Shown here: piece after piece, positions 1,183-53,419 of the stretch
Layout: each line of letters begins with the position of its first letter
Position numbering within the stretch: the first letter of the stretch is position 1
Made by a program: the position numbers and the translations under genes
The notes under the pieces: generated by a model
What the model was told of the DNA's origin: nothing
Databases searched by the model: none
The model's input: the letters and a program-made list of their open reading frames with translations, nothing else
DNA from: Octopus sinensis
Lineage: Eukaryota
NCBI RefSeq assembly: GCF_006345805.1
Contig: NC_043000.1
Location: 868,001-932,000 of the forward strand
Reading direction: 5' to 3'
DNA: 64,000 nucleotides

Positions 1183-2510
1183 TTAAGAGGAGGGGGCTGT
1201 GTTAAGTCCGTGTGGGGTAGTGGTTTGTAGGGTGAAGATGTAGCGTTCCTCCAAGTGGAGCCTAGAAAGTGGACAACCATTGTGGGGGGTGAGACCAAAC
1301 ACTGAGATGTCATCTAGGGAATGGCTGGCCGAGCGGAAGTGGCGTGCGACGGGAGAAAAAGAGTGTAGGCGAACGTCACTCAAATGTTCTGTGAATCGGT
1401 CGGACAACCGGCGTCCCGTCTGTCCTACATACAGCATCCCGCATAGGTTGCATTTAATGCAGTATATGAGTCCAGACGAGGTGCACGTAAAAGAGTGCCT
1501 AATACGTACAGTTCGCCGGTTGGAGCCGGTGACAGCAGTGGTGTTGGTGATGAAGGGGCAAGTGTTGCAGCGGGATCTGGAGCAAGGGAATGATTCGTGT
1601 GGGGCTGAGGGGGAAGGCGAGAGGGTGCAGTAGACCAGGAGGTCACGTAGATTCCGGGCTCGTTTGAAGGAGGACAGGGGTGGGTTAGGGAAAATGGGGC
1701 GGGTTGTGGGATCAAGCTGGAGGCGACGGAAGGCACGTAGTATCTTGCGACGAAGGGGTAGAGTAGAGGGGTGGAAAAGGAGGGGGAAGGGGTGCGGTTG
1801 GGGGTGGGGGGTTGAAGGAGACAGGGCAGTGGTGCGGTCGATGCGACGGGCGCGGGTGAGGGCATTAGAGATGAGTATGGGTGGGTAACCTCGGAGTCTG
1901 AACAGGCGGGCCAGGTATTGAGATTGTGTCTCGAAATCCTGGTCGCGGCTGCACAAACGTCGGAGGCGGAGGAACTGGGAGTAGGGGATGGCTCGTTTGG
2001 TGTGGAAGGGGTGGGAGGAGGAGAAGTTGAGATAGAGGTGGGAATCCGTAGGTTTAAAGAAGGCGGTGGTGGTGAGAGAGTTGGAGGGGCGGTCGATTCG
2101 GAGAGAGATGTCAGGAAGTTACAGAGGTGTTGGAGATGGTTGAGGTGAATTGTAGAGAGGGTGAAGTTGGAAAGGAAAGAGATGAATTGGCAGAGAAGTT
2201 CACGGAAAGGGAGGTGGCACCTATGTAGTCGTCTATATAGCGACCGTATAGTTCGGGGGTCGGCCCAGAGAACTGGGAGAATACTTGGGCCTCAATGTAG
2301 CCAAGAAAGAGATTGGCGAAATTGGGGCCCATCCTAGTTCCCATCGCGACCCCGGACACCTGTTGGTACGTTTCCCCGGCGAACGTGAAACAGTTGAGGG
2401 TGAGGACGAGCTCAGCCAGGCGGAGAAGGGTGGGGTGCTAGGGGTGGGGTCAGGACGACGGTCGAGGAAGTATTGGAGGGCTAGGAGACCGTCATTGTGG
2501 GGAATCACTG
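1183..2510 (-). mobile_element. 5'-truncated Penelope-like retroelement (RT core, thumb and C-terminal GIY-YIG endonuclease), frameshifted
   Basis: RT motifs GVAMGTRMGPNFANLF and RYIDD (ORF 2111-2359); EN CxxC...LIYCIKC..C...YVGQTGRRL..RF.EH (ORF 1183-1956); GC-rich relative to flanks. Confidence 0.92.
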
Positions 2511-2569
2511 TATATATATATATATATAAGTATCTGAAAGAATGGAGTTGAACGACTAGTTATCAAATA

Positions 2570-2637
2570 TCCTTTATTCTCGACATATGTTTCGAAGGCT
2601 GCATATTATGCAGATTTCTCTTCAGGAAAATCAAGGA
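2570..2637 (-). ncRNA. Type I hammerhead ribozyme motif (left arm)
   Basis: Minus strand: tccttgattttc CTGAAGA g..ctgcat-aat-atgcag..c GAAA catat GTC gagaataaagga; stem I pairs at 11 of 12 positions; palindromic stem III ACATATGT. Confidence 0.88.
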
Positions 2638-3195
2638 AACTTAAGTCGACATCAAAATGCACAAAAAACTTTTAGCTGACCGCTCTCAAGGAGCCCATGG
2701 CGATAATGAGTGTCTCTTTATAATGAGTGACGTCAGAGTGGCTGAATGTAGAAGAATCTAGAAGTTTCTAAAGGTTCAAGAGTTCAAACGAAGTAGGAGG
2801 AGGGAGGCATAAGAATAGTAAGATGAGAGAGTGCAGGTCAAAAGAATGGTGGGTTTAAATGATTTCTTTTGTGAATGAGTGCCTGTGTGTGTGACTGTAT
2901 ATAATTGTCTTAATGTGTGTATGTGTGTGTCTGAATGCGTAATTGTGTTTGTGGATGGGTAGAAGTCAGAAAACTGACAGCTGTGAGTTGAAAGGTCTGT
3001 ATCTGTGTGTTCGATTATGTTTACTGTAGGGAAAGGAAAGTAGATAGCGAAAGAGAGAAATAATCGAGCGAGGTGAGAGGCAACGCAAGAATGGATAGTA
3101 GTAATTGGGAATATAAGAAAATCTTTTTTGACTATTGGGGTGAAATATAGCAAAAAAAAATTTGGGGGAATTCGAGGGGTTATCTATATTAGTCA

Positions 3196-3687
3196 CTATT
3201 TATATGAATGAAAGGTGTGTCTTTTCCAGTGTAAGCACCTGTAGGATCTTTCGACGATTGTGTTTATTAAAGGGCCTTTGGCGAACAAAATATGAAAAAG
3301 TTCGGAATTACAGATGCCACAAAATTTTCTGCCTTTATCAAACGGGAAGGACACCGACAAAATGGACCATTCGAGCTTGAACGTAGTGTTATTGTTCTTC
3401 AGACGCCATACTAATTTGCTTAGCCCCGTGCTGTGTTGCTTTCTCTTATCTCTGAAATTGGAATAATGGTTGGAGACTTTTTGGGCTAATTTAGAAGAGG
3501 TTGCGCCAATATAGAAGTAGACATCGGTTCCAGAAGAGATTTTGCATTGGTAAGTGGTGTTTCTAATTTTGGAATTTTTGGATAAGAACTTTAATCTGTT
3601 GGGGTTGGTTTCCGATACTAACACAGAGTTTTTATTATTGTGATAGGTGTAAAAATTGTTGCTGGTTTTGGCTACGATACTATTCAT
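3196..3687 (-). CDS. PLE-type GIY-YIG endonuclease domain ORF (163 aa)
   Basis: TTYQC..YIG..NH..F..STGLSKLVWRLK..W.I..CGICNSE..LIN..CLH pattern. Confidence 0.8.
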   Translation of the reverse strand: MNSIVAKTSNNFYTYHNNKNSVLVSETNPNRLKFLSKNSKIRNTTYQCKISSGTDVYFYIGATSSKLAQKVSNHYSNFRDKRKQHSTGLSKLVWRLKNNNTTFKLEWSILSVSFPFDKGRKFCGICNSELFHILFAKGPLINTIVERSYRCLHWKRHTFHSYK

Positions 3688-3689
3688 CT

Positions 3690-4358
3690 TTAGTAATTAT
3701 CATTACTATTAGTTATAATAGCGTCGGCAAATTCCCTGGCTATAGGAATGCTGCGATTGTTATCATCAATAATATAACTGTTATTAAGAATGCTGGTACT
3801 ATTACCACTAACACCACCACTGTTAATAATCTGGCTAATGTTATTATCATTATAACTATTGCTAACGCTAATGCTGCTATGAATGTTGCTAATGCCCATA
3901 CTATTTCTATTATTATTATTATTGTATGTTACGTTGGAATGGGTAAGGGCGGTGTCGCTACTCATGGGTGGAGAGACCCTATTTAACAGCTTATTATTGT
4001 GGGAAGCTATTATCTGCGAAAGATTTTTAGTATTTGAGAATGCTATTCTTACTTTATGCGAATTTATAGTGGAGTAGTATCTAGAATTCCTAGGAAAATT
4101 CTTAGTAACGGCTTCACGGAATTGTAAAGGGAGATTAGACCTGATTTTTCTCCCGAAAGGAATCACAAACCAGATATAGTTTTTTTTGTTCTTGGAATGG
4201 CTGAGAGTGTTGACATTTACATTAAAGGGTATCTTTCTGTGTTGTAGAATGGGTTTTGGTTTACGCTGGCCTCCCCTGGTCCGTAAGTTATTATTGTAAA
4301 ATATATTTGTGTCGACGTTGCTAGAGCTGAAATCACTATTTATGTTATCATATATCAT
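3690..4358 (-). CDS. Asn-rich ORF (222 aa) containing the PLE RT-to-EN linker segment; no RT catalytic core
   Basis: KKNYIWFVIPF...KNFP...INSHKVRIAFSNTKNLSQIIASHNNKLL matches the RKR.IWFNPPF...NRNTVKVSYS.M.N...II..HN.KIL linker as I recall it. Confidence 0.7.
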   Translation of the reverse strand: MIYDNINSDFSSSNVDTNIFYNNNLRTRGGQRKPKPILQHRKIPFNVNVNTLSHSKNKKNYIWFVIPFGRKIRSNLPLQFREAVTKNFPRNSRYYSTINSHKVRIAFSNTKNLSQIIASHNNKLLNRVSPPMSSDTALTHSNVTYNNNNNRNSMGISNIHSSISVSNSYNDNNISQIINSGGVSGNSTSILNNSYIIDDNNRSIPIAREFADAIITNSNDNY

Positions 4359-4825
4359 ATATCGATCCGGCCCATCCTAAACTAATATCTGCCCATCAAG
4401 ATAAGATAACTTCTAATAATAATATAAATAACATAAATAGTGATTTCAGCTCTAGCAACAGATACAGACCTTTCAACTCACAGCTATCAGTTTTCTGACT
4501 TCTACCCATCCACAAACACAATCACGCATTCAGACACACACATACACACGTTAAGACAGTTATATACAGTCACACACACAGGCACTCATTCACAAAAGAA
4601 ATCATTTAAACCCACCATTCTTTTGACCTGCACTCTCTCACTTACTATTCTTATGCCTCCCTCCTCCTACTTCGTTTGAACTCTTGAACCTTTAGAAACT
4701 TCTAGATTCTTCTACATTCAGCCACTCTGACGTCACTCATTATAAAGAGACACTCATTATCGCCATGGGCTCCTTGAGAGCGGTCAGCTAAAAGTTTTTT
4801 GTGCATTTTGATGTCGACTTAAGTT

Positions 4826-4922
4826 TCCTTGATTTTCCTGAAGAGAAATCTGCATAATGTACTCCTTATTCCTTCGGAATTAGGAATATGCAGCCTTCGA
4901 AACATATGTCGAGAATAAAGGA
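4826..4922 (+). ncRNA. Type I hammerhead ribozyme motif (right arm), predicted cleavage after C4910
   Basis: CTGAAGA 4838-4844, GAAA 4899-4902, GTC 4908-4910, stem I 4826-4837/4911-4922; stem II extended by a 29-nt hairpin. Confidence 0.9.
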
Positions 4923-5400
4923 TATTTGTTAACTAGTCGTTCAACTCCATTCTTTCAGATATTTATAATTTCAAAATAAACATACAAATTTCCGCACGAA
5001 GACGCGTAGTCTATGCCCTAGCGACGTAGCTTCAACCGTGTTCTTTCTGATGTGAATTTGCTACCCAGGTATCGGTTATCTTTCGAATTATCCTTAATAA
5101 GATAATTCATTCATTACTCAAATATATATATATATATATATATAATGTGTGTATGTTCATGGGGAGGATGTTTATTCCTTTCCGTTGCAGCGATTTTCAG
5201 AATCGTTAGCGTACTGGACAAACACACTCTATCCCTTTATACACAGACAGACAGATAGATAAATAAATAGATAGATCTATAGATAGATAGATAGATAGAT
5301 ACATACATACATACATACATACATACATACATACATACATACATACATACATACATACATACATAGGCAGACAGGCAAGCAGGCAGGCAGATAGACGGAC

Positions 5401-8849: not shown

Positions 8850-10109
8850 CAAAATATAACATGGAGGTAGGGAATGTGTGTGTGTGTGTGTGTGTGTGTG
8901 TAGCATGTGTAACAAATAATGCCGAACGAAAATTACAAGGCAAGAAATATAATTTACATGATCAAAATTTAAATGTTTCGAAGAAAACCGAAAACAAATA
9001 TTAACAGTCAAAGAACAGTTCCTAACAATACTATTACTATTTATGAATTACTAAACCCAGAGATTTTGGCCTATAATCAACAAGGACCTTATTCTTCTGT
9101 AACAAGTGTAGACTAGGCACCGATAACGACCATCACGCTGACCTGATTGTCTGGATATAGAAGATTGATATTATTTTTTTCCCTTCATAGATTGGCCCTT
9201 GATCGGACGGACCTATAGATGAAAGTCTCTCCATCCGTGTCAATTTCATATATTTTCAATGCAGTATATCTAGTACTACATTATCCAATGCAAACTTATT
9301 TATTTTTAAATGACTAAGTGTGATTTGGGGATATTCTGTTGCTATTTCTAGCAGGTCGAGTTACCTTAAAGGGGCCACCCTTCCCACATTGGTACGGTAA
9401 GAGATTATGGAAGACTGCAAACGCATGGAATTGATTTTCTTTCAGAATTAATCTTTTAATGGAAACATCGACGAAAACCCTCTCAAGGATAATCCACAAC
9501 GGCGCAAGAAGGAAAGATGTTTATTTGTAAACCTATCCTGAAGTGATGCCAGTTTATCTGTGAGTTCAACAACACGGAGTTGTTTTCTTTTGTTCAGTGG
9601 ACTTCTTTCCCAACCGCTTGTTGTTGCCTTCTTGTATTATTCTACGAAGGTGGCATCAAAGGGTCAGGAAAGGGAACCTTATTCTGCAACAAACACAAGA
9701 CCTTATAATGTACAATACATAAAGATTTACCACAAGATTTACTACGAGATTTACAATGATAATTAAAATGGAATTAGCACAGAAGTCTACGAACTGATGT
9801 CCGTCAATATTTATAAAGAGATCACTAGATTATAAATCAGCATGTTATTTTAACAATTCTTTGTAACTTTGATACAAGGCTAGAAATTTTGAGGGGAGGG
9901 GTTCAAATCGAATATATCGTCTCTAGTACTTGGCTGATATTTTATTTTAACGACACCGAAAGTATGGAAGGCAAAGTCTATTTCGGTGATATTTGAACTC
10001 AGAACATAAATCCGGTAGAAATGCCGTTAAGCATTTTCACTGACGTGAAGACGAGTCTGCCAGCTCACCCACATAACATTTTTGTTAATTCTTTTTACTA
10101 TATATACAA

Positions 10110-10850
10110 GGCCCGAAATTTGGGGTGGGGAAGTTTAGTCATTTACATCGGTCCCAGTATTTGACTGGCATTTATTTCATCGACCCCAGGTAAAGGCGAC
10201 CTCAGCGGTATTGAACTCAAAACATAAAGACAGACGAAATACCTATTTCTTTATTACCCACAAGGGGCTAAACACAGAGAGGACAAACAAGGACAGACAA
10301 ACGGATTAAGTCGATTACATCGACCCCAGTGCGTAACTGGTACTTATTTAATCGACCCCGAAATGATGAAAGACAAAGTCGACCTCGGTGGAATTTTAAC
10401 TCAGAACGTAGCGGCAGGCGAAATACCTATTTTTTATTACCCACAAGGGGCTAAACACAGAGAGGACAAACAAGGACAGACAAACGGATTAAGTCGATTA
10501 TATCGACCCCAGTGCGTAACTGGTACTTATTTAATCGACCCCGAAAGGATGAAAGGCAAAGTCGATCTCGGCGGAATTTGAACTCACAACGTAACGGCAG
10601 GCGAAATACCTATTTCTATTTCTTTATTACCCACAAGGGGCTAAACACAGAGCGGACAAACAAGGACAGACATAGGTATTAAGTCGATTACATCGACCCC
10701 AGTGCGTAACTGGTACTTAATTTATCGACCCCGAAAGGATGAAAGGCAAAGTCGACCTCGGCGGAATTTGAACTCACAACGTAACGGCAGGCGAAATACC
10801 GCTAAGCATTTTGTCCTTTTTGCTAGCGATTCGACTAACACGTTGCCTTC
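10110..10850 (-). mobile_element. SINE family A with tandem ~183-bp 3' modules
   Basis: Junction gaaatac|ctattt at 10242, 10426 and 10609. Confidence 0.9.
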
Positions 10851-11079
10851 ATCTTTTTAATAATAAATACATTAGTATTTATGTATGTAAGATATTCTGC
10901 AATAATATCATATCCATAACAGATCTCTTAAATGGTATTTGTAACAAAATTGTTAGAGCGTTGAACAAAATGCCTTGCGATATATAGTTCTGGCTGTTTG
11001 CGTTCAAATACTGCCAAGGTCGGCCTTGTTTTTCCTCAAACAGTTAACTCTTTGCCTTTCTTCTGTATCACATGTGATA

Positions 11080-11405
11080 CACAAGTCGTATTCCCTCTGA
11101 CGCTTACGACGACGAGGGTTCCACTTGATCCGATCAACGGAACAGCTTGTTTGTGAGATAAACGTGCAAGTGGCTGAGTATATTTCAGAGACACGTGTAC
11201 CCCTTCACATGCTTCTCAAGGAGAGTCAGCGTGACACAGAGTGTGACTAGACTGGCCCCTTGAAATACAGGTATTACTCAGTTTTGCCAGCTGATTTCAT
11301 TGGAGCAACGTGAAATAAAGTGTCTTGCTCAAGAACACAATGCGCCGCCGAGAATCGAACTTGCGACCTTACGATCGCGAGCAGAATACACTAACCACTA
11401 AGCCG
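11080..11405 (-). mobile_element. Chimeric SINE (family D-like head, family B tail)
   Basis: Similarity to both families within the window. Confidence 0.7.
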
Positions 11406-11534
11406 CACACACACACACACACACACACACATATGTATATATACGTACATATATATCTATTAGGTTGGCAACTAAGTTCCCGCGGTTTTTTAAATTTAAA
11501 TTTTTTAAAAGGTTTAATAAAAAATAACAACTAA

Positions 11535-12940
11535 TTAATCAATAATGTATTCACCCTTGTTGTTTACAACTTCTTCCCAACGTTCAACAAGATTTTCAAT
11601 ACTTCGTTGGAAGAACTCACTTGATTTCGACTCGAAAAATTGATCCAACCAAGCTCTCAATTCTGCATCAGTATTGAACGAAACTCCGCGCATAGCATTT
11701 GAAAGAGATCGAAAGAGGTGGAAATCCGTTGGTGTCAAATCAGGAGAGTACGGCGGGTGTGACAGCACTTCCCAGCCATTCTTTTGAATGGCTTCCTTGT
11801 CATATTGGCAATATGAGGGCGTGCGTTGTCGTGCAGCAGAAGAACTCCATGCTGACGATTAGGTCTTTTCTCTTGAATAGTCGTGTCGAGTCGTTCTATC
11901 TGTTGAGTGGAGGTGCAATGGCCCAGTGGTTAGGGCAGCGGACTCACGGTCGTAGGATCGCGGTTTCGATTCCCAGACCGGGCGTTGTGAGTGTTGAGCG
12001 AAAACACCTAAAGCTCCACGAGGCTCCGGCATGGATGGTGGTGATCCCTGCTGTACTCTATCACAACTTTCTCTCACTCTTACTTCCTGTTTCTGTTGTA
12101 CCTGTATTTCAAAGGGCCGGCCTTGTCACTCTCTGTGTCACGCTGAATATCCCCGAGAACTACCTTAAGGGTACACGTGTCTGTGGAGTGCTCAGCCACT
12201 TACACGTTAATTTCACGAGCAGGCTGTTCCGTTGGTCGGATCTACCGGAATCCTCATCGTCGTAACCGACGGAGTGCTTCCATCATCTGTTGAGTATATA
12301 GTTCCGCGTTGACCGTTTGGTTCCGTTCAAGCAATTCGTAATGGATAATCCCTTCCCAATCCCACCGTACGCACATCGTTTTACATAGATGAAGAGCTTG
12401 CTTCACGCGCGGTGTCGCTTGTTTACCGTGGCAAAGCCATTCCTTACGCTGCTTCATATTGATGTACAAGCACCATTTTTCTTCGCCATTAACGATTCGG
12501 TGAAGAAATCGTTGCTTGTATCCATGAGTTGAGCGGTGATTGTGGCTCGTTGATTTTTGTTCTTGTCATTAAAGCATGCGGAACTCATGCTCCATACTTC
12601 TGAACCTTTTCTTTCGAGTGAAAATGCTTCTCTATAGCAGTGAGGGAGCATTCCATTCTCTCTGTCAGTTCCCTTGTCGTTTGACGAGAATTTTTGTGCA
12701 AAATTTGGCTTAATCGTTCTTCAAAGAACTCAACTGGACGGCCAGAACGAGGTGCATCTTTGAGGTCAAAATTGCCATTTTTGAACTTGGCATACCAAAC
12801 ACGAGCGCTTCTTTCAGCTATGGCACCCTCTCCATACACAGCACAAATGTCGCGAGCAGCATTTGCGGTCTTAAACCTTGATTAAAAGCAAAAAGAAGGA
12901 GGTGTCGAAAATGCATGGTTTTCTTAACTTGATATTTCAT
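11535..12940 (-). pseudogene. Mariner DD34D transposase pseudogene
   Basis: HFRHLLLF, PRSGRP, EKWCLY, HDNARPH, HPPYSPDLTPTD motifs spread over several frames; stops and frameshifts. Confidence 0.93.
11909..12284 (+). mobile_element. SINE family B inserted in the mariner with an 11-bp TSD
   Basis: TSD atctgttgagt at 11898-11908 and 12285-12295. Confidence 0.92.
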
Positions 12941-22618: not shown

Positions 22619-23136
22619 GTGCGTGTGTGTATTATACACATATATTTACATATATATATGTATATATATGTGTGTGTATATATATATACATATATATACG
22701 CATATATATATATACTTTTTTACTCTTTTACTTGTTTCTGTCATTTGACTGCGGCCATGCAGGAGCACCGCCTTTAATCGAGCAAATCTACTACTCTTTG
22801 CAAAGATTTATTCTTTGCAAGCCTACTACTTATTCTATCGGTCTCTTTTGCCGAACCGCTAGGTTACGGGGACGTAAACACACCACCATCGGTTGTCAAT
22901 CGATGTTGGAGGAACAAACACAGACACACAAACATATACACACACATACATACATATACATGCATGTATATGACGGGCTTCTTTCAGTTTCTGTCTACCA
23001 AATCCACTCATAAGGCTTTGGTCGGCCCGAGGCTATAGTAGAAGACACTTGCCAAAGGTGCCATGCAGTGGGACTGAACCCGGAACCATGTGGTTAGTAA
23101 GCAAGCTACTTACTACACAGCCATATATATAAAGAA

Positions 23137-23195
<59 letters not shown>

Positions 23196-26950: not shown

Positions 26951-27138
26951 TACTCTAAGTAATTAAGGGTTTAGCAACGAATTGCCTCACCACACACCGA
27001 ATTTAGAAATAGCAGTCAAAGAGTTATAGCCATTCTTTCTACTAAAAGGGAGATCTCAGTAAAAACACAGCACTTGAAAGGCAAACACAGACAGGTAAGA
27101 GAGAATGAAATGACGGCAATCTATCATACAATTTTAAG

Positions 27139-27234
27139 TCACCTACGGACGTACGTTTCGAAATTAAGTTTTAGGAAAGCATAAGAATTAGATAATCATG
27201 TCTTACCCAACTTCTTTTCTCATCAGCGTAGGAC
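27139..27234 (-). ncRNA. Type I hammerhead ribozyme motif (left arm)
   Basis: gtcctacg CTGATGA gaaa...tttc GAAA cgtac GTC cgtaggtgac. Confidence 0.88.
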
Positions 27235-27460
27235 ACTACAATTATGAATAATTGTTACTGATAGCCATATTTCATCCCAGTAAATGACCACAGCATCTTG
27301 TCTTGGCTACACGCGGGTGGGAAGGGGTTGGTGACACAAACTTTCATTCACACTTTGAATTTGGTGATACTGGTAACGGCTTTAGCTCGCTCTGATACTG
27401 AGTTGAGATGATGCCTTCTAGTATCTCGAAATTTAATATACAATTATTCATAATTGTAGT

Positions 27461-27558
27461 GTCCTACGCTGATGAGAGAAGAAGTTGGGTAAGACATGAT
27501 TATCTAATTCTTATGCTTTCTCCTAAAACTTAATTCGAAACGTACGTCCGTAGGTGAC
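27461..27558 (+). ncRNA. Type I hammerhead ribozyme motif (right arm), predicted cleavage after C27548
   Basis: CTGATGA 27469-75, GAAA 27537-40, palindromic ACGTACGT stem III, stem I cctacg/cgtagg. Confidence 0.88.
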
Positions 27559-27942
27559 TTAAAATTGTATGATAGATTGCCGTCATTTCATTCTCTCTTA
27601 CCTGTCTGTGTTTGCCTTTCAAGTGCTGTGTTTTTACTGAGATCTCCCTTTTAGTAGAAAGAATAGCTATAACTCTTTGACTGCTATTTCTAAATTCGGT
27701 GTGTGGTGAGGCAATTCGTTGCTAAACCCTTAATTACTTAGTATTACTTAAACTTTCCTCGAATGAGGCTTTTACATGCCGAGATCTACTTGGTGTAATT
27801 AATGATTATTCCAAATTAATTAATTTCACCCTATATTGTTACTGATAGCCATATATATATATATATATGCCAATATACACATGCACATATATATGTTTAC
27901 TCTTTTTCCTTTTGTTTTTCCTCTTCCTTCTTTCTTCTACAG

Positions 27943-33467: not shown

Positions 33468-33639
33468 CGAAGCATAAAGAGAAAGAAATAAGAAAAATAT
33501 CTGGAATTTTGAGTAACAATAAATGGAAAAGTTATGCAAAGGGAACAGCTAAAGAAAAGCCATCGAAAAATACCGATGTGTTGAAAGCTTCCCATTTCTA
33601 CTAAGCAAACTTTTTTTTTTTAATCATTTTTCCTGTATA

Positions 33640-35205
33640 GGCGCAGGAGTGGCTGTGTGGTAAGTAGCTTGCTAACCAACCACATGGTTCCGGGGTCAGT
33701 CCCACTGTGTGGCATCTTGGGAAAGTGTCTTCTGCTATAGCCCCGGGCCGACCAATGCCTTGTGAGTGGATTTGGTAGACGGAAACTGAAGAAGCCTGTC
33801 GTATATATGTATATATATATATAAGTGTGTGTGTATATGTTTGTGTGTCTGTGTTTGTTCCCCCCACATCACTTGACAACCGATGCTGGTGTGTTTACGT
33901 CCCCGTCACTTAGCGGTTTGGCAAAAGAGACCGATAGAATAAGTACTGGCTTACAAGAATAATCCGGGGTCGATTTGCTCGACTAAAGGCGGTGCTCCAG
34001 CAGGCTGCTGTCAAATGACTGAAACAAGTAAAAGAGTATTTGTATCGGTAATTTGCACTGCCGTTGTGCTTGGTCAACACTTTAAAGGGTTTTAGTTGAA
34101 CAAATCGACCCCGGTATTTTGTTTTTTTTTCTCCTTTTCAAGACTGGTACTTATTCAATTGATCACTTTGACCGAACCGCTAAGTTACTGGGACGTAAAC
34201 AAACCAACACCGGTTGTCAAGCTGTGGCCGTGATGTTAACTAACACAGATACCAAGACTAACACAGTTACACGCGCGCACACACACACAAACATGTATAT
34301 AACATATATGTGTGTATGTGTGTGAGTGTTATAATATATATATATAGGCGTAGGAGTGGCTGTGGGGTAAGTAGCTTGCTTAGCAACCACATGGTTCCGG
34401 GTTCAGTCCCACTGCGTGGCACCTTGGGCAAGTGTTTTCTACTATAGCCTCGGGTCAACCAAAACCTTGTGAGTGGATTTGGTAGACGGAAACTGAAAGA
34501 AGTCTGTCGTATATATATGTATACGTATGTGTATATGTATATGGCTGTGTATATGTATATGGCTGTATATGTTTGTGTGTCTGTGTTTGTCCCCCCCCCA
34601 ACATCGCTTGACAACAGATGCTGGTGTGTTTACGTCCCCGTGACTTAGCGGTTCGGCAAAAGATTCCGATAGAATAAGTACTAGACTTACAAAGAATAAG
34701 TCCTGGGGGTCAATTTGCTCGACTAAAGGCAGTGCTCCAGCATGGCCACAGTCAAATGACTGAAACAAGTAAAAGAGTAAAGAGTAAAAGAGTATATGTT
34801 TGTGTTGTGTTCGTGTATGCATAATATATATACATATAATACATAATAATGACGAGTGGAGGCGCAATGGCCCAGTGATTAGGGCAACGGACTCGCGGTC
34901 ATAGGATCGCGGTTTCGATTCCCAGACCGGGCGTTGTGAGTGTTTATTGAGCGAAAACACCTAAAAGCTCCACAGTGGTGATCCCTGCTGTACTCTTTCA
35001 CCACAACTTTCTCTCACTCTTACTTCCTGTTTCTGTTGTACCTGTATTTCTAAGGGCCGGTCTTGTCACTCTCTGTGTCACGCTGAATATGGGTGCACGT
35101 GTCTGTGGAGTTAATTTCACGAGCAGGCTGTTCCGTTGATTCGGATCAACCGGAACCCTCATCGTCGTAACCGACGGAGTGCTTCCCTATAATTGACGAA
35201 ATTGG
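33640..35205. mobile_element. SINE cluster: family C (+) 33640-34035 and 34345-34795, partial C (-), family B (+) 34855-35205
   Basis: Similarity to other copies; family C has caccttgggcaagtgt after the tRNA head and an internal TA/GT microsatellite. Confidence 0.88.
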
Positions 35206-38057: not shown

Positions 38058-39458
38058 TCAGTTTTCTTTTGTCAGAGCCTCCTGATAAACCACGTTCCTT
38101 GTGCGCTCATGATTGCCAAGAATGAAGAGTTTATGTGGATTTCCAACTCGAGAACAGGCTACGTACAATTGACCATGACTGAAAACCGGTTGTGACAGGT
38201 TAATGCCTACAATGTCCAGTGATTGTCCCTGTGACTTGTTGATTGTCATCGCGAAGCATAGTTTTATCGGAAATTGAAAGCGTTTAAACTGAATAGGAAC
38301 ATCAGAGGGTGAAATACTCATTTTATGTATCATTTTGATTGTTCCTACAAATGGTCCACTCAAAATTTCAGCAGTTATAACATGGCATTGAATCCTCCTA
38401 ATAACCATTCGGGTTCCATTGCATATTTCAGGCGTTTCCATATTTCTGAGCACTATGATTGGGGCACCAACTTTCAAACACAAATGATGAGGTGGAAGTC
38501 CCGGAGGTGTTAGCTTGTTGAGTAGCTCGGGTGGATATTTGACTGTATCATTCTCATCTTTATTTGTATCGATGGACATGAAAGAAACTATCTCACCAGG
38601 ATTCATATCAAGTACTTGTTTATTTGTAGCATGAGCTGTTGTATTATGAGGCGATAGAATAGCTCTTGCCCTTAGCCAATCGAGATCCTGGAAGTTGGTT
38701 TCGACGTCAGGTAAAACGGCTCTTATAAGTTCTTCTACATTTGGAACGAAATTCCCAAAAGGCAACCGAATATGCTCATCATCAACGAAAGGCAAAACTC
38801 CATCACCAAGATCTAATAGGTGTTTTGCGAAAGCCTCAGACTCCACATCACTATGTAGGTGGACTCTCATGTTTGTTTGAAGATGGCGACTGATAACACT
38901 GTGCCACACAAAAGAATGCTTTATACATGCATTAACCTCATCGGCTCTAGTGCCTGCTCGGACAACAGGAAGAGTTTGTCGAAAATCTCCTGCCATGAGA
39001 AACGTAGCTCCACCCATTATTTTTGTATTGTGACGCAAATCTTGGAGAGTTCTGTCAAGAGCCTCAAACATGGCCTTATTACTCATTGTAGCCTCATCCC
39101 AAATAAAAAGACTGCATTCACGAAGAAGTCTTGCTCTTGAGGAACTACGATCTATATTACATATAGGATTATCTTTCTTTCCAATGTCCATGGGCAATTT
39201 GAATGCACTATGTGCCGTACGGCCGCCTTGAAGCAGTGTCGCTGCAATACCACTTGAGGCACATGCAATGGCAATTCGACGTTCAGCGCACAGCTTTGCG
39301 AGAATCAAATTGATAACGAAAGTTTTACCAGTACCACCTGGAGCATTCAAAAAGAAAAGCTTTCCTTGGTTCAATCTAACGCTGTCAATAATTTCATTAT
39401 AAATCTCTGTTTGTTCAGGCAAAAGTCTTGGTTCATCTCGCGTAATTGTTTCCGTCAA
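38058..39458 (-). CDS. Helitron PIF1-family helicase domain (466 aa ORF)
   Basis: GGTGKT, IWDEATM, GDFRQTLP, FAMTINKSQGQSL, FSHGQLYVACSRV. Confidence 0.93.
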   Translation of the reverse strand: MTETITRDEPRLLPEQTEIYNEIIDSVRLNQGKLFFLNAPGGTGKTFVINLILAKLCAERRIAIACASSGIAATLLQGGRTAHSAFKLPMDIGKKDNPICNIDRSSSRARLLRECSLFIWDEATMSNKAMFEALDRTLQDLRHNTKIMGGATFLMAGDFRQTLPVVRAGTRADEVNACIKHSFVWHSVISRHLQTNMRVHLHSDVESEAFAKHLLDLGDGVLPFVDDEHIRLPFGNFVPNVEELIRAVLPDVETNFQDLDWLRARAILSPHNTTAHATNKQVLDMNPGEIVSFMSIDTNKDENDTVKYPPELLNKLTPPGLPPHHLCLKVGAPIIVLRNMETPEICNGTRMVIRRIQCHVITAEILSGPFVGTIKMIHKMSISPSDVPIQFKRFQFPIKLCFAMTINKSQGQSLDIVGINLSQPVFSHGQLYVACSRVGNPHKLFILGNHERTRNVVYQEALTKEN

Positions 39459-40540
39459 TTCGGCAATGTTGTAGTTTTTTCTGACATGTATTCAACATCC
39501 AAAGGCGCTTCATGATGGACAGGTGTTGGCAGATGGAATTCACTTAAACCGCGTATAACATAGCGTCTGATGTGTCTGTCCATGTCGATTAATGCCTCAT
39601 TATAAACGTCGTTGCCATCACGTAGCGCTAAATTAGCCTGTATGTCCTTTGATAGGCTCTGTCTGAACGATTCCCAAAGGTTAAGAGGGTTGCTGGGATT
39701 ACAGTGGATTAATATGCTACAAAACAATCGACGCATTTGCCATGGTAGTTTACAATTTGAGGCCTCTGCTAATGTCCTGTGTAAGTGGTCGTCATTGAGA
39801 AGAAGTCCGCGCCTCAAACATGCTTTCCTGTAAGTGGCGCAGATGATACCATCAACCGTGCGAAGATCAGCAAAAGACTTCGGTCCAGTAACTACATGAA
39901 GTAGCATTCTCAAAAAGATTTCCTGTTTGGTAGGATGAATATTATACACACGCCCAATGACGTTCTTCCTAGAAACACCGGGCCAATTGTCAAGTTCTGT
40001 TCCATGTGACCTGCGCAGCCTATTATTGTTGTTGTATGTGTAATATTCCGGTACTTCAGGGTAAATGAGAGTAGCAGCAAACTCATCAACTGAACACAAT
40101 TTTAAAAATGCTGTAAGCGTAGTCCCTTTTGGATTTTCAATGACTTGACGTGCATTTTTCTCTGTGAAGTAAACCAGCTGTCTCTTCTGTAAATGAACAT
40201 TCAGGTGGAAAACTGATGGTGAGCTTAGATGAATCTCGTATCCAAAAATGCGCCACGCTGCATAATTGGAGGATACATACCTACCCAAAACGAATTGTTT
40301 AATTTCGTCATGTCTAAGGTCTTCATCACTGAACACAAACACGGCCATATCATCGCCCTTATTAATGTACTTGCAGAGGTATTGTATGCATCTCACCGAA
40401 CTGCAGTACTCAACATTAATGTGTGCATTAAATGTTTTGGAAAGCAAAGGGTTGAATGGAACGATCCAGGCATTATCAACATCGAATGTTTTTAGCCGTT
40501 GTTTAATTGTAGCTGTGCGGCCACCCAAACCTGGGTCACA
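39455..40540 (-). pseudogene. Helitron Rep C-terminal portion, frameshifted relative to the helicase; HUH catalytic region absent
   Basis: VDNAWIVPFNP..HINVEYC..YLCKYINKG.D..GRYVSS..A.WRIF; frame change near 39480. Confidence 0.85.
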
Positions 40541-40747
40541 TATATGAAAGAGAGGACGGGAAAATGAAATATTTTGCAATGTAAACATGATTTGTTTTAA
40601 GAGAAAGATTGTCATGATTGTGTGTTGGTGGTGGCGATGATAATTATCATTAGGAAAAACACAAGTTGTGGCGATGATAATTCTAGACCCCTTTTCACAT
40701 TTTGATGAAGAGAACCCGATTTCATTCGGGTCTAATGGGGCCACATA

Positions 40748-42827: not shown

Positions 42828-44934
42828 AATCAAACATTTTCATCAAACATTTTCATCAAACATTTATCATGAAACAATTTCATCAAACATTTTCATCAAA
42901 CATTTTCATCAAAAATTTTCATCAAACATTTTCAAATATTTTCATCAAACATTCGCTTCAAACAATTTCATCAAATATTTTTCATCAAACATTTATCATC
43001 AAACAATTTCATCAAACATTTATCATCAAACATTTTCATCAAATATTTTAATTAAACAATTTCATCAAACATTTTCATCAGACATTTTCATCAAAAATTT
43101 TCATCAAATATTTTCATCAAATATTTTCATCAAACATTTTCAAATATATTCATCAAACATACTCCTCAAACAATTTCATCAAACATTTTTCATCAAAAAT
43201 TTATCATGAAACAATTTCATCAAACATTTTCATCAAACATTTTAATCAAATATTTTCATCAAACATTTTTCCTCAAACATTTATCATGAAACAATTTCAT
43301 CAAACATTTTCATCAAACATTTTCATCAAACATTTTCAAATATTTCCATCAAACATTCTCCTCAAACAATTTCTTCAAGCATTTTTCATCAAACATTTAT
43401 CATCAAACATTTTCATCAAATATTTTAATCAAACATTTTCATCAAACACTTTCATTAACCGATTTCATCAAACATTTTCATCAGACATTTTCATCAAACA
43501 TTTTCATCAAATATTTTCATCAAACATTTTTCATCAAACATTTATCATGAAACAATTTCATGAAAAAATTTCATCAAACATTTTCATCAAACATTTATCA
43601 AACATTTTCATCAAATATTTTCATCAAACATTTTCAAATATTTTCATGAACCATTCTCCTCAAACATTTTCATCAAGCATTTTCAAATATTTCCATCAAA
43701 CATTCTCCTCAAACATTTTCATCAAACATTTTCATCAAACATTTTCATCAGACATTTTCATCAAATAATTTCATCAAGCATATTCATCAATCATTTTCAT
43801 CAATCATTTTCATCAAACATGTTCATCAAACATTTTTTATCGAACATTTTCATCAAACATTTAACATTAAACATTTTCATCAAACATTTTCATCTAACAT
43901 TTTCATCAAACATTTTCAGACATTTTCATCAAACATTTTCATCAACATTTTCATCAAACATTTTCATCAAACATTTTTTCAAACATTTTCATCAGACATT
44001 TTTTATCAAACATTTTATCAAACATTCATCATGAAATATTTTCATGAAACATTTTCATCAAACATTTTTCATCAAACATTTTTATCAAACATTCATCATG
44101 AAACATTTTCATGAATCGTTTTTCATCAAACATTTTCATCAAACATTTTCAGACATTTTCATCAAACATTTTTATCAAACATTTTCATCAGTCATTTTCA
44201 TCAAACATTTTCATCAAACATTTTCATCAAACATTTTTTCAACAGACATTTTCATCAAACATTTTTCATCAGACATTTTTATCAAACATTTATCATGAAA
44301 CATTTTCATCAAAAACTTTCATCAAACATTTTCATCAAACATTTTCAGACATTTTCATCAAGCATTTTAATCAGACATTTTCAGAAATTTTCATCAAACA
44401 TTTATCATGAAACATTTTCATCAAACATTTCCATCAAACATTTTCATCAGACATTTTCATCAGACATTTTTATCAAACATTTTCAGACATTTTCATCAGA
44501 CATTTTCATCAAACATTTTCATCAAACATATTCATCAATCATTTTCATCAAACATTTTTTCACACATTTTCAACCTTTATCATGAAACATTTTTATCAAA
44601 CGTTTTCATCAGACATTATCATCAAACATTTTTATCAAATATTTTCATCAAACATTTTCATCAAACATTTTTCATCAAATATTTTCATCAAACATTTTCA
44701 TCAACTATTTTCATCAAACATTCTCCTGAAACAATTTCATCAAAGTTTTCATCCAACATTTATCAGACATTTTCATGAAACATTTTTCATCAAACATTTT
44801 CATCAAACATTTTCATCAAACATTTTTCATCAAACATTTTCATCAAACATTTTCATCAAATATTTTTATCAAACATTTTTATCAAACATATTCATCAAAC
44901 ATTTTCATCAAGCATTTTCATCAAACATTTTTCA
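42828..44934. repeat. ~2.1-kb degenerate minisatellite, ~13-bp unit TTTTCATCAAACA
   Basis: Direct reading; the many FIKHFHQTFSSN ORFs are artefacts. Confidence 0.97.
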
Positions 44935-46695: not shown

Positions 46696-46794
46696 AAAAG
46701 CTAGGGTGGGTGATACCCAAATACTTTTAGTCATTACTGCGTTCATAAAATAATTAGGTAATTATTATTGGAATGCTGATGAAGATTAACAAAT

Positions 46795-46960
46795 AGGCGC
46801 AGGAGTGGCTGTGTGGTAAGTAGCTTGTTTACCAACCACATGGATCCGGGTTCAGTCCCACTGCGTGGCACCTTGGGCAAGTGTCTTCTACTATAGCCTC
46901 GGGCCGACCAAAGCCTTGTGAGTGGATTTGGTAGACGGAAACTGAAAGAAGCCCGTCGTA

Positions 46961-47002
<42 letters not shown>

Positions 47003-50324: not shown

Positions 50325-50720
50325 TTACTTGTTTCAGTCATTTGACTGAGGCCATGCTGGAGCACCACCTTTAGTAGAGCAAATCGACCCCGGGACTTAT
50401 TCTTTGTAAGCCTAGTACTTATTCTATCGGTCACTTTTGCCGAAACGCTAAGTGACGGGGATATAAACACACCAGCATCGGTTGTCAAGCAAATGCTAGA
50501 GGGACAAACACAGATACACAAACATACACACACATATATATATACATTATATATATATGACGAGCTTCTTCAGTTTCCGTCTTCCAAATCCACTCACAAG
50601 GCTTTGGTCGGCACGACGCTATAGTAGAAGACACTTGCCCAAGATTCCACGCAGTGGGACCGAACCCGGAACCATGTGGTCGGTAAACAAGCTACTTACC
50701 ACACAGTCACTTCTGCGCCT
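50325..50720 (-). mobile_element. Family C SINE
   Basis: Similarity to other copies. Confidence 0.88.
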
Positions 50721-51089
50721 ACTGTTTCTTGTTAGATTAAACTATTGTTTTCTTCGCGGCCTTCGACAAAATAATTCATATAGAAAAAAATAAAACAAAG
50801 AAAAATAGTGACATGGCTTTCGTAAAATCCTCCTGATTCTCCTGGTGCTATCGGTGTCTGTAAAAACATATTCGATTATTCCAACCGATTAATGTTCGGT
50901 TCGAAAGAAAACGTATTGAGTCAGATATAAATAAGTATCAGTAGCCACTTTCTTTGTGTGAAATCGCATGGCTCAGTGGTTAGAGCACCGGCCTTACAAT
51001 CGAGCGGTTGCGAATTCGAATCCCAGACCGGACTGCGCGATATGGTCTTGAGAAAGACACTTTATCTCACGTTACTCCAGTTCATTCAG

Positions 51090-52256: not shown

Positions 52257-52356
52257 NNNNNNNNNNNNNNNNNNNNNNNNNNNNNNNNNNNNNNNNNNNN
52301 NNNNNNNNNNNNNNNNNNNNNNNNNNNNNNNNNNNNNNNNNNNNNNNNNNNNNNNN
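52257..52356. other. Assembly gap (100 N, true size unknown)
   Basis: Direct reading. Confidence 1.
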
Positions 52357-52469
52357 TTTCTCTTCTCCCCTTTAAACGAACACAAGAAGACTGCTTTCAA
52401 ATTATATATGTCAGCACCATTGGCACCTTCGGTCTAATGGTAACTCTAAATATCCCCATATTGATCTGC

Positions 52470-53419
52470 CCACTATAAACACACAGGTAAAAACACCTAT
52501 CCCCAGAAAACGTGAAATCTTATGGTTAGCTCCGCCGTTCTCCCTAGTGGTCAGATAACTGCTATAATTATTTCTTAAATTTTAAATTCAAACTTTCCAC
52601 CACAGCATAAGTATTGTTCCATGTTCAATAAATCTTCAATAACAATATCTTACTCCACCGGACCAAACCACGGATCTATCATAGCTGCTCTCAATAGTCG
52701 CAAACTCCGAGGCAAATCAATTGAACATATAAATCCTTATATAGCACCCGAAAGGAATCCGGACAATAATAGTACCACAACTACTAACAACTTTCCAATG
52801 CTAAGTACTTCTAAAAGGAAAACAGTATCTCGCAACCCGAATTACCAAATAATGAATACCAGTTCCAACAGAACCAGCCAGTCGAAGTGTGTTATAAACT
52901 CAGACTTAGACCCACACTTACCGACGACAGGTCAACCTAGATTAACGTCACTAGGACGACATTCTCTCATACAGACAACACATTTTGCAATTGACGTGCA
53001 TCCAATTTATGCCCTCTTGAAGGCTTTTGCTTACGCAAAAATGTGATATATAAATGCACTGTGTTGACAACTTGCAACCACCAAGCAATAATATATATTG
53101 GGAACCCAGTAGAGTTTGAGCGTAGATATCGTAAACATATTAATTCTTTTATTAATCCTAAAACCGAATTTTCTATTTCTTTAGCTACACATATCCATAA
53201 TCTCAAAGCGCAAAATATACAATACAATCTATCTTGATCAACAGTAACAGAAGACCCCCTTACAATTCATATATACGTAAATGTAATCTTTCCATTAGGG
53301 AATTCTTAACAATTCTTCGCACGCACAATTACTCAATGTTAAATAGGTTTTCAGACGTCATCTTCTCTTGTAGACACTGGTATTATTCGACCCTTAGACA
53401 TTTGGCTAACTCTTCATAG
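52470..53419 (+). pseudogene. Decayed PLE linker and GIY-YIG region, same subtype as 3196-4358
   Basis: RKREILWLAPPFS...FNKSSITISYS...VIYKC...YIG...RY.KH.NSF...SISLATHIH.LK...KCNL..RE...LN...CRH; stops and frameshifts. Confidence 0.8.

What the first reader, a model, noticed from the sequence alone, without database searches (positions are those of the whole stretch)
2531..4961. RT-less GIY-YIG cassette bracketed by hammerhead-bearing inverted repeats
Seen: ~480-bp near-identical inverted arms, each with a complete type I hammerhead near its outer end, enclosing two open ORFs (Asn-rich plus PLE linker; GIY-YIG) and no RT. The upstream ORF has its own ATG with an in-frame TAG seven codons upstream, and no RT thumb is recognisable before the IWF motif. 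Established: PLEs carry hammerheads in their terminal repeats and form inverted, 5'-truncated insertions. Inference: either an ordinary 5'-truncated PLE, or a family of endonuclease-only elements mobilised by another PLE's RT. The second would be an undescribed non-autonomous class. The decayed relative at 52470-53419 also shows no RT upstream of the linker.
Basis: partly seen in the sequence, partly recalled or inferred. Interest (0 to 1): 0.8.

Follow-up and report, generated by a model that had tools for sequence, protein, structure and literature searches.

The report
Truncated octopus Penelope-like retrotransposon, head-to-head insertion
This is a dead, shortened copy of a known kind of jumping gene (a Hydra-clade Penelope-like retrotransposon) that landed as two copies facing each other in a TA repeat, so it is ordinary rather than a new endonuclease-only element.

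Summary
Inverted arms 2525-3006 and 4458-4967 differ by 6 mismatches and two indels. Each arm carries a type I minimal hammerhead, which Rfam misses. Between them lie two minus-strand ORFs, linker plus Asn-rich and GIY-YIG, and no RT.

The novel reading is not supported. Octopus sinensis holds a relative (locus L003) in which the same linker, Asn-rich stretch and endonuclease continue upstream, in frame, into an RT with Hydra-clade hallmarks. Other contigs and about 400 proteins of roughly 700 aa show the same RT-linker-endonuclease order.

The two ORFs are one ORF split by a frameshift. The near-invariant catalytic Arg is Lys.

The insertion really spans about 2525-5122. A 155-nt tail on the right copy reaches a second (TA)n. 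This matches the published Penelope-like pattern of a head-to-head insertion with a tail at one end. A second ORF-less hammerhead pair lies at 26955-27741.

One point is unexplained. Four RT-less 5' ends fall within about 95 nt, just after the RT thumb. A short lineage or a defined RNA 5' end remains possible, at about 15%.

The parts
2511..2528 (.). (TA)9, left remnant of the target microsatellite
   Evidence: Read from the sequence. The 3' end of the element merges into it.
2525..4378 (-). Main copy, 5'-truncated. It holds the linker, the Asn-rich stretch, the GIY-YIG endonuclease and the 3' UTR with the hammerhead. Its 3' end is the short form, without the tail.
   Evidence: Aligns to O. 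sinensis L001 9866-11676 (68%) and to L003 10323-11583 and its 3' UTR. No significant homology beyond 4378 in this orientation.
3690..4358 (-). ORF of 222 aa. It holds the RT-to-endonuclease linker (YIWFVIPFG...SHNNKLL) and an Asn/Ser-rich stretch. It is a remnant of the RT-linker-endonuclease ORF.
   Evidence: tblastn to L003 ORF residues 434-643 and to the linkers of 658-806 aa Hydra-type proteins. The residue 131-222 stretch is 23% Asn and 20% Ser.
3196..3687 (-). ORF of 163 aa: a GIY-YIG endonuclease of the Hydra-clade type (CxxC..E..N..CxH). It has Lys at the near-invariant catalytic Arg (residue 70). It is in the -1 frame relative to the linker ORF.
   Evidence: 2098 homologues. Alignments. 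Two relatives in A5 match Pfam GIY-YIG, best E=7e-7. AlphaFold model mean pLDDT 78.9; four of the five best PDB matches are GIY-YIG nuclease chains: T4 EndoII (two chains), Hpy188I and I-TevI.
2568..2639 (-). Type I minimal hammerhead of the main copy (core 2625-2582). Helix II is shortened by a 29-nt deletion.
2525..3006 (-). Left inverted arm, which is the last 482 nt of the main copy
4388..4459 (+). 5' piece of the second, inverted copy. Positions 4428-4459 are an exact inverted duplicate of 4317-4348. Positions 4393-4427 resemble the same element region in L004. About 9 nt (4379-4387) lie between the two heads.
   Evidence: I4; p about 0.013 against L004; the reverse orientation gives nothing.
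4458..4967 (+). Right inverted arm: the second copy, with an internal deletion, joined to its 5' piece at a 2-nt microhomology
   Evidence: The junction was read from the sequence.
4824..4924 (+). Type I minimal hammerhead of the second copy (core 4838-4910). It has the long helix II also seen in the O. sinensis copies.
4968..5122 (+). 3' tail of the second copy.
   Evidence: 82% identical to L004 9551-9687 and 86% to L003 12376-12433.
5123..5144 (.). (TA)n, right remnant of the target microsatellite
   Evidence: Read from the sequence.

Best explanation
The region is one integration event of a Hydra-clade Penelope-like retrotransposon (PLE) into a (TA)n microsatellite, and it is now dead.

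Inferred mechanism, following published PLE biochemistry:
- The element's GIY-YIG endonuclease cut both DNA strands.
- Both 3' ends primed reverse transcription on element RNA, so two cDNAs grew toward each other with their 3' termini outward.
- The minus-strand copy started at an internal UAUA site, so it has no tail. It stopped just after the RT-thumb coding region, at 4378.
- The plus-strand copy started at the distal site, so it carries the 155-nt tail. It copied 482 nt, then skipped to the same 5' region.
- The two heads were joined.

The 'bracketing inverted repeats' are therefore the 3' UTRs of the two copies. The hammerheads are the ordinary ribozymes of PLE terminal repeats. The two ORFs are the C-terminal third of the single RT-linker-endonuclease ORF, split by a later or inherited frameshift. 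Nothing here can mobilise itself.
For: Shown:
- A full-length relative with RT exists at L003 9053-11056, a 667-aa ORF with DKT, LYRDD, FLDV and SNH motifs followed by the same linker and Asn-rich stretch. Its endonuclease ORF is at 11074-11559, and a tandem second copy starts at 12517.
- L004 is 86% identical to L003 and is truncated inside the RT.
- Logan contigs L010/L011 and L012 carry RT-linker-endonuclease on a single contig.
- The endonuclease sits at the C-terminus of 658- and 690-aa proteins. 408 hits of roughly 700 aa lie mostly on 2.3-3.3 kb contigs.
- Window homology to the L003 ORF reaches 4378, past the ATG at 4358. The TAG aligns with a CAG codon in L003.
- The frameshifts between linker and endonuclease lie at different places in the window and in L003. 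L001 and P0003 are in one frame.
- Lys replaces the conserved Arg.
- dN/dS is equally low against RT-bearing copies (0.08-0.10) and against RT-less L001 (0.07).
- The window endonuclease is 74% identical to that of RT-bearing L004 and 79% to that of L001.
- A tail is present at one end only, and (TA)n lies on both sides.
- A second head-to-head hammerhead pair without any ORF lies at 26955-27741.

From the literature:
- An inverted 5'-truncated copy and a one-sided tail are typical of PLEs (PMC8557442, section 6).
- A PLE protein cleaves and extends both strands and starts reverse transcription at two internal sites (PMC11167929).
- Opposite-strand hammerhead pairs were attributed to truncated PLEs (PMC4209133).
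Against: - Four RT-less 5' ends map to L003 positions of about 10245, 10305, 10323 and 10338. This is a span of about 95 nt in an element of about 3.5 kb, closer than random truncation predicts.
- The window and L001 share an ATG-containing 5' segment.
- Only a handful of copies could be sampled. No RT-bearing copy from the window's own species was seen.
- The tail is 155 nt, longer than the 30-40 nt described for other PLEs.
Confidence: 0.8

Rival explanations
1. A self-perpetuating RT-less lineage. These would be short elements of about 1.85 kb that encode only the linker plus GIY-YIG endonuclease. They would be copied by the RT of full-length Hydra-clade PLEs and would have a fixed 5' end just after the thumb.
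For: - The window main copy, the window second copy and L001 (a different species with non-homologous flanks) start within about 35 nt of each other.
- The window and L001 share the ATG context and are each other's closest sampled relatives in the endonuclease (79%).
- The ORF is under strong constraint between them (dN/dS 0.20 overall, 0.07 in the endonuclease).
Against: - The ends are not identical. They differ by 16-35 nt.
- No shared 5' UTR, promoter or upstream pLTR was found.
- Window sequence upstream of the ATG is decayed ORF sequence: TAG aligns with CAG, with frame-shifting indels.
- The same constraint is seen against RT-bearing copies.
- dS is saturated (1.7 or more). A shared truncated ancestor would need very long persistence of a lineage whose endonuclease is redundant with that of its helper.
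- The window copy has a frameshift and Lys at the catalytic Arg.
Confidence: 0.1
2. Copies of a defined short RNA made by full-length elements. An internal transcription start or RNA processing site just after the thumb region would yield a linker-endonuclease RNA that is sometimes reverse transcribed. This would give dead copies that share a 5' end.
For: - The 5' ends cluster.
- Both cDNAs of the window event end at the same place, as expected if each ran off the end of a short template.
- L003 has TATATATA at 10283-10290, which is 15-50 nt upstream of three of the four ends (read). This is inference only.
Against: - There are no transcript data.
- The L005 end lies upstream of that TATA.
- No hammerhead-like motif was found at this site in L003.
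- An AT-rich hot zone for 5' junction formation at a (TA)n target would give the same picture.
Confidence: 0.12
3. A host gene: a domesticated GIY-YIG endonuclease kept for a cellular function.
For: Low dN/dS. O. sinensis gene models cover relatives (P0001, P0002).
Against: - The flanks are not shared between species.
- There is a frameshift, and the catalytic Arg is replaced.
- The region sits inside a typical PLE insertion with hammerheads and (TA)n flanks.
- The gene models are pieces of transposon ORFs.
Confidence: 0.02

Closest known systems
Hydra clade of C-terminal endonuclease-positive Penelope-like elements (Craig, Yushenova, Rodriguez, Arkhipova 2021, PMC8557442)
   Same: [quoted passage not shown]
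- Hammerheads are present.
- Insertion is into (TA)n.
- The full-length relative in L003 is short, with an RT-linker ORF of 667 aa followed, after a frameshift, by a 161-aa endonuclease ORF.
- DKT and RW(K)-type RT motifs are seen in the full-length relatives.
   Different: - The octopus lineage has lost every Cys of the CxCX5C linker knuckle and carries an Asn/Ser-rich stretch there, yet it still sits in (TA)n.
- The window copy lacks the RT through truncation.
- The tail is about 155 nt rather than 30-40 nt.
Head-to-head or inverted 5'-truncated PLE insertions with a one-sided tail (Evgen'ev and Arkhipova 2005; PMC8557442 fig. 2; PMC11167929)
   Same: - Two copies lie with their 3' ends outward.
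- Inverted repeats flank the unit.
- A tail is present at one end only.
- Hammerheads lie in the repeated 3' region.
   Different: - Both copies are truncated at nearly the same point.
- The inverted copy carries an internal deletion with a 32-nt snap-back duplicate at the junction.
Minimal type I hammerheads of metazoan PLEs (Cervera and de la Pena 2014, PMC4209133)
   Same: - The catalytic core is canonical.
- Helix III is 2 bp with a palindromic 4-nt loop (AUAU), as expected for a ribozyme that acts as a dimer.
- Helix II is long.
- Pairs on opposite strands a few hundred bases or more apart were attributed there to truncated PLEs.
   Different: - Helix II is very long (about 53 nt) in one arm and in the O. 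sinensis copies.
- No Rfam model scores the motif.
Non-autonomous PLE derivatives: animal non-LTR retrozymes (bioRxiv 10.64898/2026.07.22.740005) and non-autonomous Chlamys elements (PMC8557442)
   Same: They carry PLE terminal sequence with hammerheads but no RT.
   Different: Those are non-coding and amplify as families or tandem arrays. This is a single coding remnant, with no evidence of amplification.

Membership tests
Penelope-like element, Hydra clade | C-terminal GIY-YIG endonuclease without the internal CCHH motif, with CxxC and CxH around the conserved E and N | tested here: met
   The window endonuclease has CGIC-NSE...LINT...RCLH and aligns with 40 Hydra-type proteins. C123, C126, E129, N142, C151 and H153 are invariant.
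Penelope-like element, Hydra clade | Linker with a CxCX5C knuckle | tested here: not met
   All Cys of this knuckle are absent in the window, L001, L003 and P0004. They are present in P0152-P0154, P0034 and P0047, and in the decayed relative at 52977-53050. This is a lineage-specific loss. The rest of the linker (IWF..PF...SHNNK) is conserved.
Penelope-like element, Hydra clade | RT with DKT in place of DKG, an RWK-type N-terminal motif and YRDD | tested here: inconclusive
   The window has no RT, so the test cannot be applied to this copy. The motifs are present in the full-length relative L003 (SDKTRN, LYRDD; copy 2 has IRWLAFF) and in the family consensus (RWKA, ADKT, GLYRDDGL).
Penelope-like element, Hydra clade | Hammerhead ribozyme in the terminal repeat, and insertion into (TA)n | tested here: met
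   Hammerheads. (TA)n lies at 2511-2528 and 5123-5144. (TA)n also lies at the 3' ends of L001, L003 and L004.
GIY-YIG nuclease superfamily | GIY and YIG strands plus the catalytic R, H, E and N on the alpha/beta fold | tested here: inconclusive
   Y46, Y59-I-G, H74, E129 and N142 are present, but the near-invariant Arg is Lys70 in the window. Pfam GIY-YIG does not score the window ORF itself. It scores two relatives in the same alignment, best E=7e-7. The model's best PDB matches are T4 EndoII, Hpy188I and I-TevI, with weak E-values of 0.018-0.3. The fold and ancestry are supported. Activity of this copy is doubtful.
Type I hammerhead ribozyme | Core CUGANGA...GAAA...UH with helices I-III, helix I open | tested here: met
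   The core is invariant in four sequences. 87.5% of cells pair against 34-49% in slid controls, with 2 compensatory pairs. MFE folds recover helices I and II. No Rfam hit. Self-cleavage was not tested.
Non-autonomous (RT-less) PLE family | Many copies with a common 5' end and no RT, forming their own clade | not testable with these tools
   No octopus genome could be searched as a whole. Of the sampled copies, four are RT-less with clustered ends and at least five carry RT.

The most novel reading that the evidence does not exclude
The thumb-linker boundary of these octopus Hydra-clade PLEs may be a true RNA 5' end. It could belong to a short linker-plus-endonuclease lineage that borrows RT from full-length elements, or to a subgenomic RNA of the full-length element. 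Either would make RT-less, endonuclease-coding copies a regular product rather than accidents.
Probability: 0.15. Interest if true: 0.6.

Novelty: new member of a known kind. Interest (0 to 1): 0.22.

Why it matters
It mostly removes a false lead. The 'cassette bracketed by ribozyme-bearing inverted repeats' is the normal scar of a Penelope-like insertion, and annotators should expect such RT-less, ORF-bearing remnants in cephalopod genomes.

Two smaller points may interest transposon specialists:
- An octopus Hydra-clade lineage has lost the cysteine knuckle of the linker but still targets (TA)n. That weakens the proposed link between that knuckle and target choice.
- The 5' ends cluster just after the RT thumb. 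If a genome-wide census confirms this, it would point to a defined short RNA or a preferred junction site in PLE integration.

Tried and rejected
- Rfam, at gathering score and at E<=10, found no hammerhead. The motif had to be found with a descriptor and checked by conservation.
- Pfam gave nothing for either window ORF or for the L003 RT ORF.
- A sequence-profile search of PDB chains gave only chance hits.
- Exact look-ups of the window ORFs in public assemblies found nothing, so the source assembly could not be mined.
- DNA similarity within the window found no second copy.
- Word-indexed protein searches with the endonuclease and with the two-copy profile returned only two O. sinensis gene models.
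- Homology upstream of 4378 in the minus orientation was tested and rejected (p>0.9). The plus orientation matched instead.
- An orthologous locus in O. sinensis was considered and rejected because the flanks share only dispersed repeats.
- A programmed -1 frameshift between linker and endonuclease was considered, because both the window and L003 have the endonuclease in the -1 frame. It was rejected because the shifts lie at different places and other copies are in one frame.
- Logan contigs L015 and L016 were too short and decayed to be informative.
Full report
**Observation**

The window is cephalopod-like. Its closest proteins and repeats are from Octopus sinensis.

The arms are real. They lie at 2525-3006 and 4458-4967 and differ by 6 mismatches, a 29-nt indel and a 1-nt indel. 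That is about 1.2% divergence. On the clock used for O. vulgaris repeats (PMC13282606: JC distance 0.09 is about 25 My), this suggests an insertion within the last few million years. That date is an inference.

Coding is on the minus strand. ORF 4358-3690 encodes 222 aa and ORF 3687-3196 encodes 163 aa. The TAG is the seventh codon before the ATG.

**The hammerheads**

Rfam reports no hammerhead at gathering score or at E<=10. A minimal type I hammerhead is nevertheless present in each arm:
- Helix I is formed by the flanks.
- The core is CUGAAGA, followed by a long helix II, then CGAAAC-AUAU-GUC. This gives a 2-bp helix III with a palindromic loop.
- The coordinates are 2625-2582 (minus strand) and 4838-4910 (plus strand).

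A descriptor gives 2 matches against 0.01 expected. It was written after the fact, and the two arms are copies of each other. The better evidence is conservation. The motif sits at the same place in O. sinensis copies that are only about 68% identical overall. The core is invariant, 87.5% of cells pair against 34-49% for slid partners, and there are two compensatory pairs. This is the architecture described for metazoan PLE hammerheads, which are thought to act as dimers (PMC4209133).

**What the ORFs are**

The 163-aa ORF has 2098 homologues at E<=0.001. In the long ones (P0034, 658 aa; P0047, 690 aa) the domain is C-terminal to an RT.

Its motifs are YIG, H, CxxC-E, N and CxH, with no CCHH. 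These are the motifs of the Hydra clade of Penelope-like elements (PMC8557442, section 11).

Pfam GIY-YIG does not score the window ORF. It does score two relatives in the same alignment (best E=7e-7). An AlphaFold model (mean pLDDT 78.9, about 95 in the core) has T4 EndoII, Hpy188I and I-TevI as its best PDB matches, with weak E-values.

The window copy has Lys where at least 90% of the family has the catalytic Arg.

The 222-aa ORF holds the linker (YIWFVIPFG...SHNNKLL), which corresponds to IIWFNPPF...HNKKIL in the family. An Asn/Ser-rich stretch follows it. In this octopus lineage the CxCX5C knuckle of the linker has lost all its cysteines.

**Relatives**

- L001 (O. sinensis) holds a copy at about 9845-11676 that is 68% identical. 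It has unrelated flanks and the whole linker-endonuclease in one frame, with one stop codon.
- L003 (O. sinensis) holds a full-length relative. Its ORF 9053-11056 (667 aa) has RT motifs (SDKT, FDIASFYPS, LYRDD, FLDV, SNH), then the thumb, the same linker and the Asn-rich stretch. Its endonuclease ORF is at 11074-11559. It also has a 3' UTR with the hammerhead, a tail, (TA)n and a second tandem copy from 12517.
- L004 is 86% identical to L003 and is truncated inside the RT.
- Logan contigs L010/L011 and L012 carry RT, linker and endonuclease on a single contig.
- A search with the L003 ORF returns 408 proteins, typically about 700 aa, mostly on 2.3-3.3 kb contigs.

The family is therefore an RT-bearing PLE.

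**The supposed start codon**

Window homology to the L003 ORF does not stop at the ATG (4358). It runs to 4378, and the in-frame TAG aligns with a CAG codon of L003. Small frame-shifting indels lie between them.

The split between the two window ORFs is a frameshift after ...NSNDN. L003 has its own frameshift further upstream. L001 and the gene model P0003 read straight through. The two ORFs are thus a broken remnant of one ORF.

dN/dS is low between the window and L001 (0.20 overall, 0.07 in the endonuclease). It is equally low against RT-bearing L003 and L004 (0.08-0.10; dS is saturated). The constraint is therefore that of the active master lineages and is not evidence for a functional RT-less element.

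**True extent and origin**

The right copy does not end at 4967. Window 4968-5122 is 82% identical to L004 9551-9687 and 86% identical to L003 12376-12433, and it ends at a (TA)n at 5123-5144. The left end abuts (TA)9 at 2511-2528. The whole unit therefore sits in a split (TA)n, with the tail at one end only.

At the centre, 4428-4459 is an exact inverted duplicate of 4317-4348. On the plus strand, 4393-4427 resembles the same element region in L004 (p about 0.013). The second copy thus consists of a short 5' piece, a deletion with a 2-nt microhomology, the last 482 nt and the tail.

This fits published PLE behaviour:
- An inverted 5'-truncated copy next to the main copy, and a tail at one end (PMC8557442, section 6 and fig. 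2).
- Cleavage and extension of both target strands, and two internal start sites for reverse transcription (PMC11167929).

The step-by-step mechanism in the best explanation is inferred from these papers and was not shown here.

A second, ORF-less head-to-head pair with canonical PLE hammerheads lies at 26955-27741, beside a (TA)n. The architecture is therefore routine in this genome.

**What remains odd**

The RT-less 5' ends cluster. In L003 coordinates they lie at:
- about 10245 (Logan contig L005);
- about 10305 (window second copy);
- 10323 (window main copy);
- about 10338 (L001).

That is a span of about 95 nt in an element of about 3.5 kb. The window and L001 also share the ATG-containing segment.

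Possible causes are an AT-rich hot zone for joining the cDNA to a (TA)n target, a defined RNA 5' end, or a short lineage. The sample is tiny and was found through the endonuclease, and no whole octopus genome could be searched. I put the short-lineage or defined-RNA reading at about 15%.

**Verdict**

This is a new member of a known kind: a young but dead, 5'-truncated, head-to-head insertion of an octopus Hydra-clade Penelope-like element. It is not a new class.

Noticed in passing
window 1183-2508 (minus strand): A fragment of a different, GC-rich PLE: an RT piece with YIDD (ORF 2111-2359) and a GIY-YIG ORF at 1183-1956 (Pfam E=0.0019). Its truncated 5' end abuts the same (TA)9 at 2511-2528, so two PLE clades appear to have used one microsatellite.
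   Followed up: partly
window 26955-27255 and 27440-27741: A second head-to-head inverted pair, 98-99% complementary. Each arm has a canonical PLE hammerhead (CUGAUGAG...CGAAAC GUAC GUC) at 27226-27152 (minus strand) and 27469-27544 (plus strand). (TA)n lies on the left and no ORF lies between the arms.
   Followed up: partly
window 52258-53395: A decayed Hydra-type linker plus endonuclease lies at 52448-53395 and still shows the CxCX5C knuckle. A 100-N assembly gap at 52258-52356 lies just upstream.
   Followed up: partly
window 4968-5122; L003 12376-12515; L004 9551-9687: The 155-nt tail is 82-86% identical between the window and the O. sinensis copies, while the rest of the element is about 66-68% identical. 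In L003, the last 36 nt or so of the tail are an inverted complement of the start of the next tandem copy, across the (TA)n. This suggests a conserved RNA or DNA structure at the reverse-transcription start region.
   Followed up: partly
window 3540-3630; L001 10480-10560; L003 11074-11150: The octopus lineage has replaced all cysteines of the CxCX5C linker knuckle, yet its copies still sit in (TA)n. This bears on the proposed role of that knuckle in target choice (PMC8557442).
   Followed up: partly
window 61125-61836 (minus strand): Another GIY-YIG ORF (Pfam E=1.9e-4). It is 28% identical to the product of 1183-1956 and is probably a third PLE remnant.
   Followed up: no
window 38058-40744 (minus strand): A PIF1-like helicase ORF of 466 aa (Pfam E=1.3e-64), directly preceded by a 429-aa ORF with no Pfam match. 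It may be a Helitron-like element.
   Followed up: no
window about 43000-44600 (minus strand): A satellite of units like CTGATGAAAATGTTTGATGAAAATGTT. It mimics hammerhead core words in pattern scans.
   Followed up: no
window 22819-23155, 33636-33946, 46793-46984, 50411-50721, 62287-62601 and others: A SINE-like repeat occurs in at least ten copies. It is shared with the O. sinensis loci at 70-84% identity over matches of about 110-345 bp.
   Followed up: no
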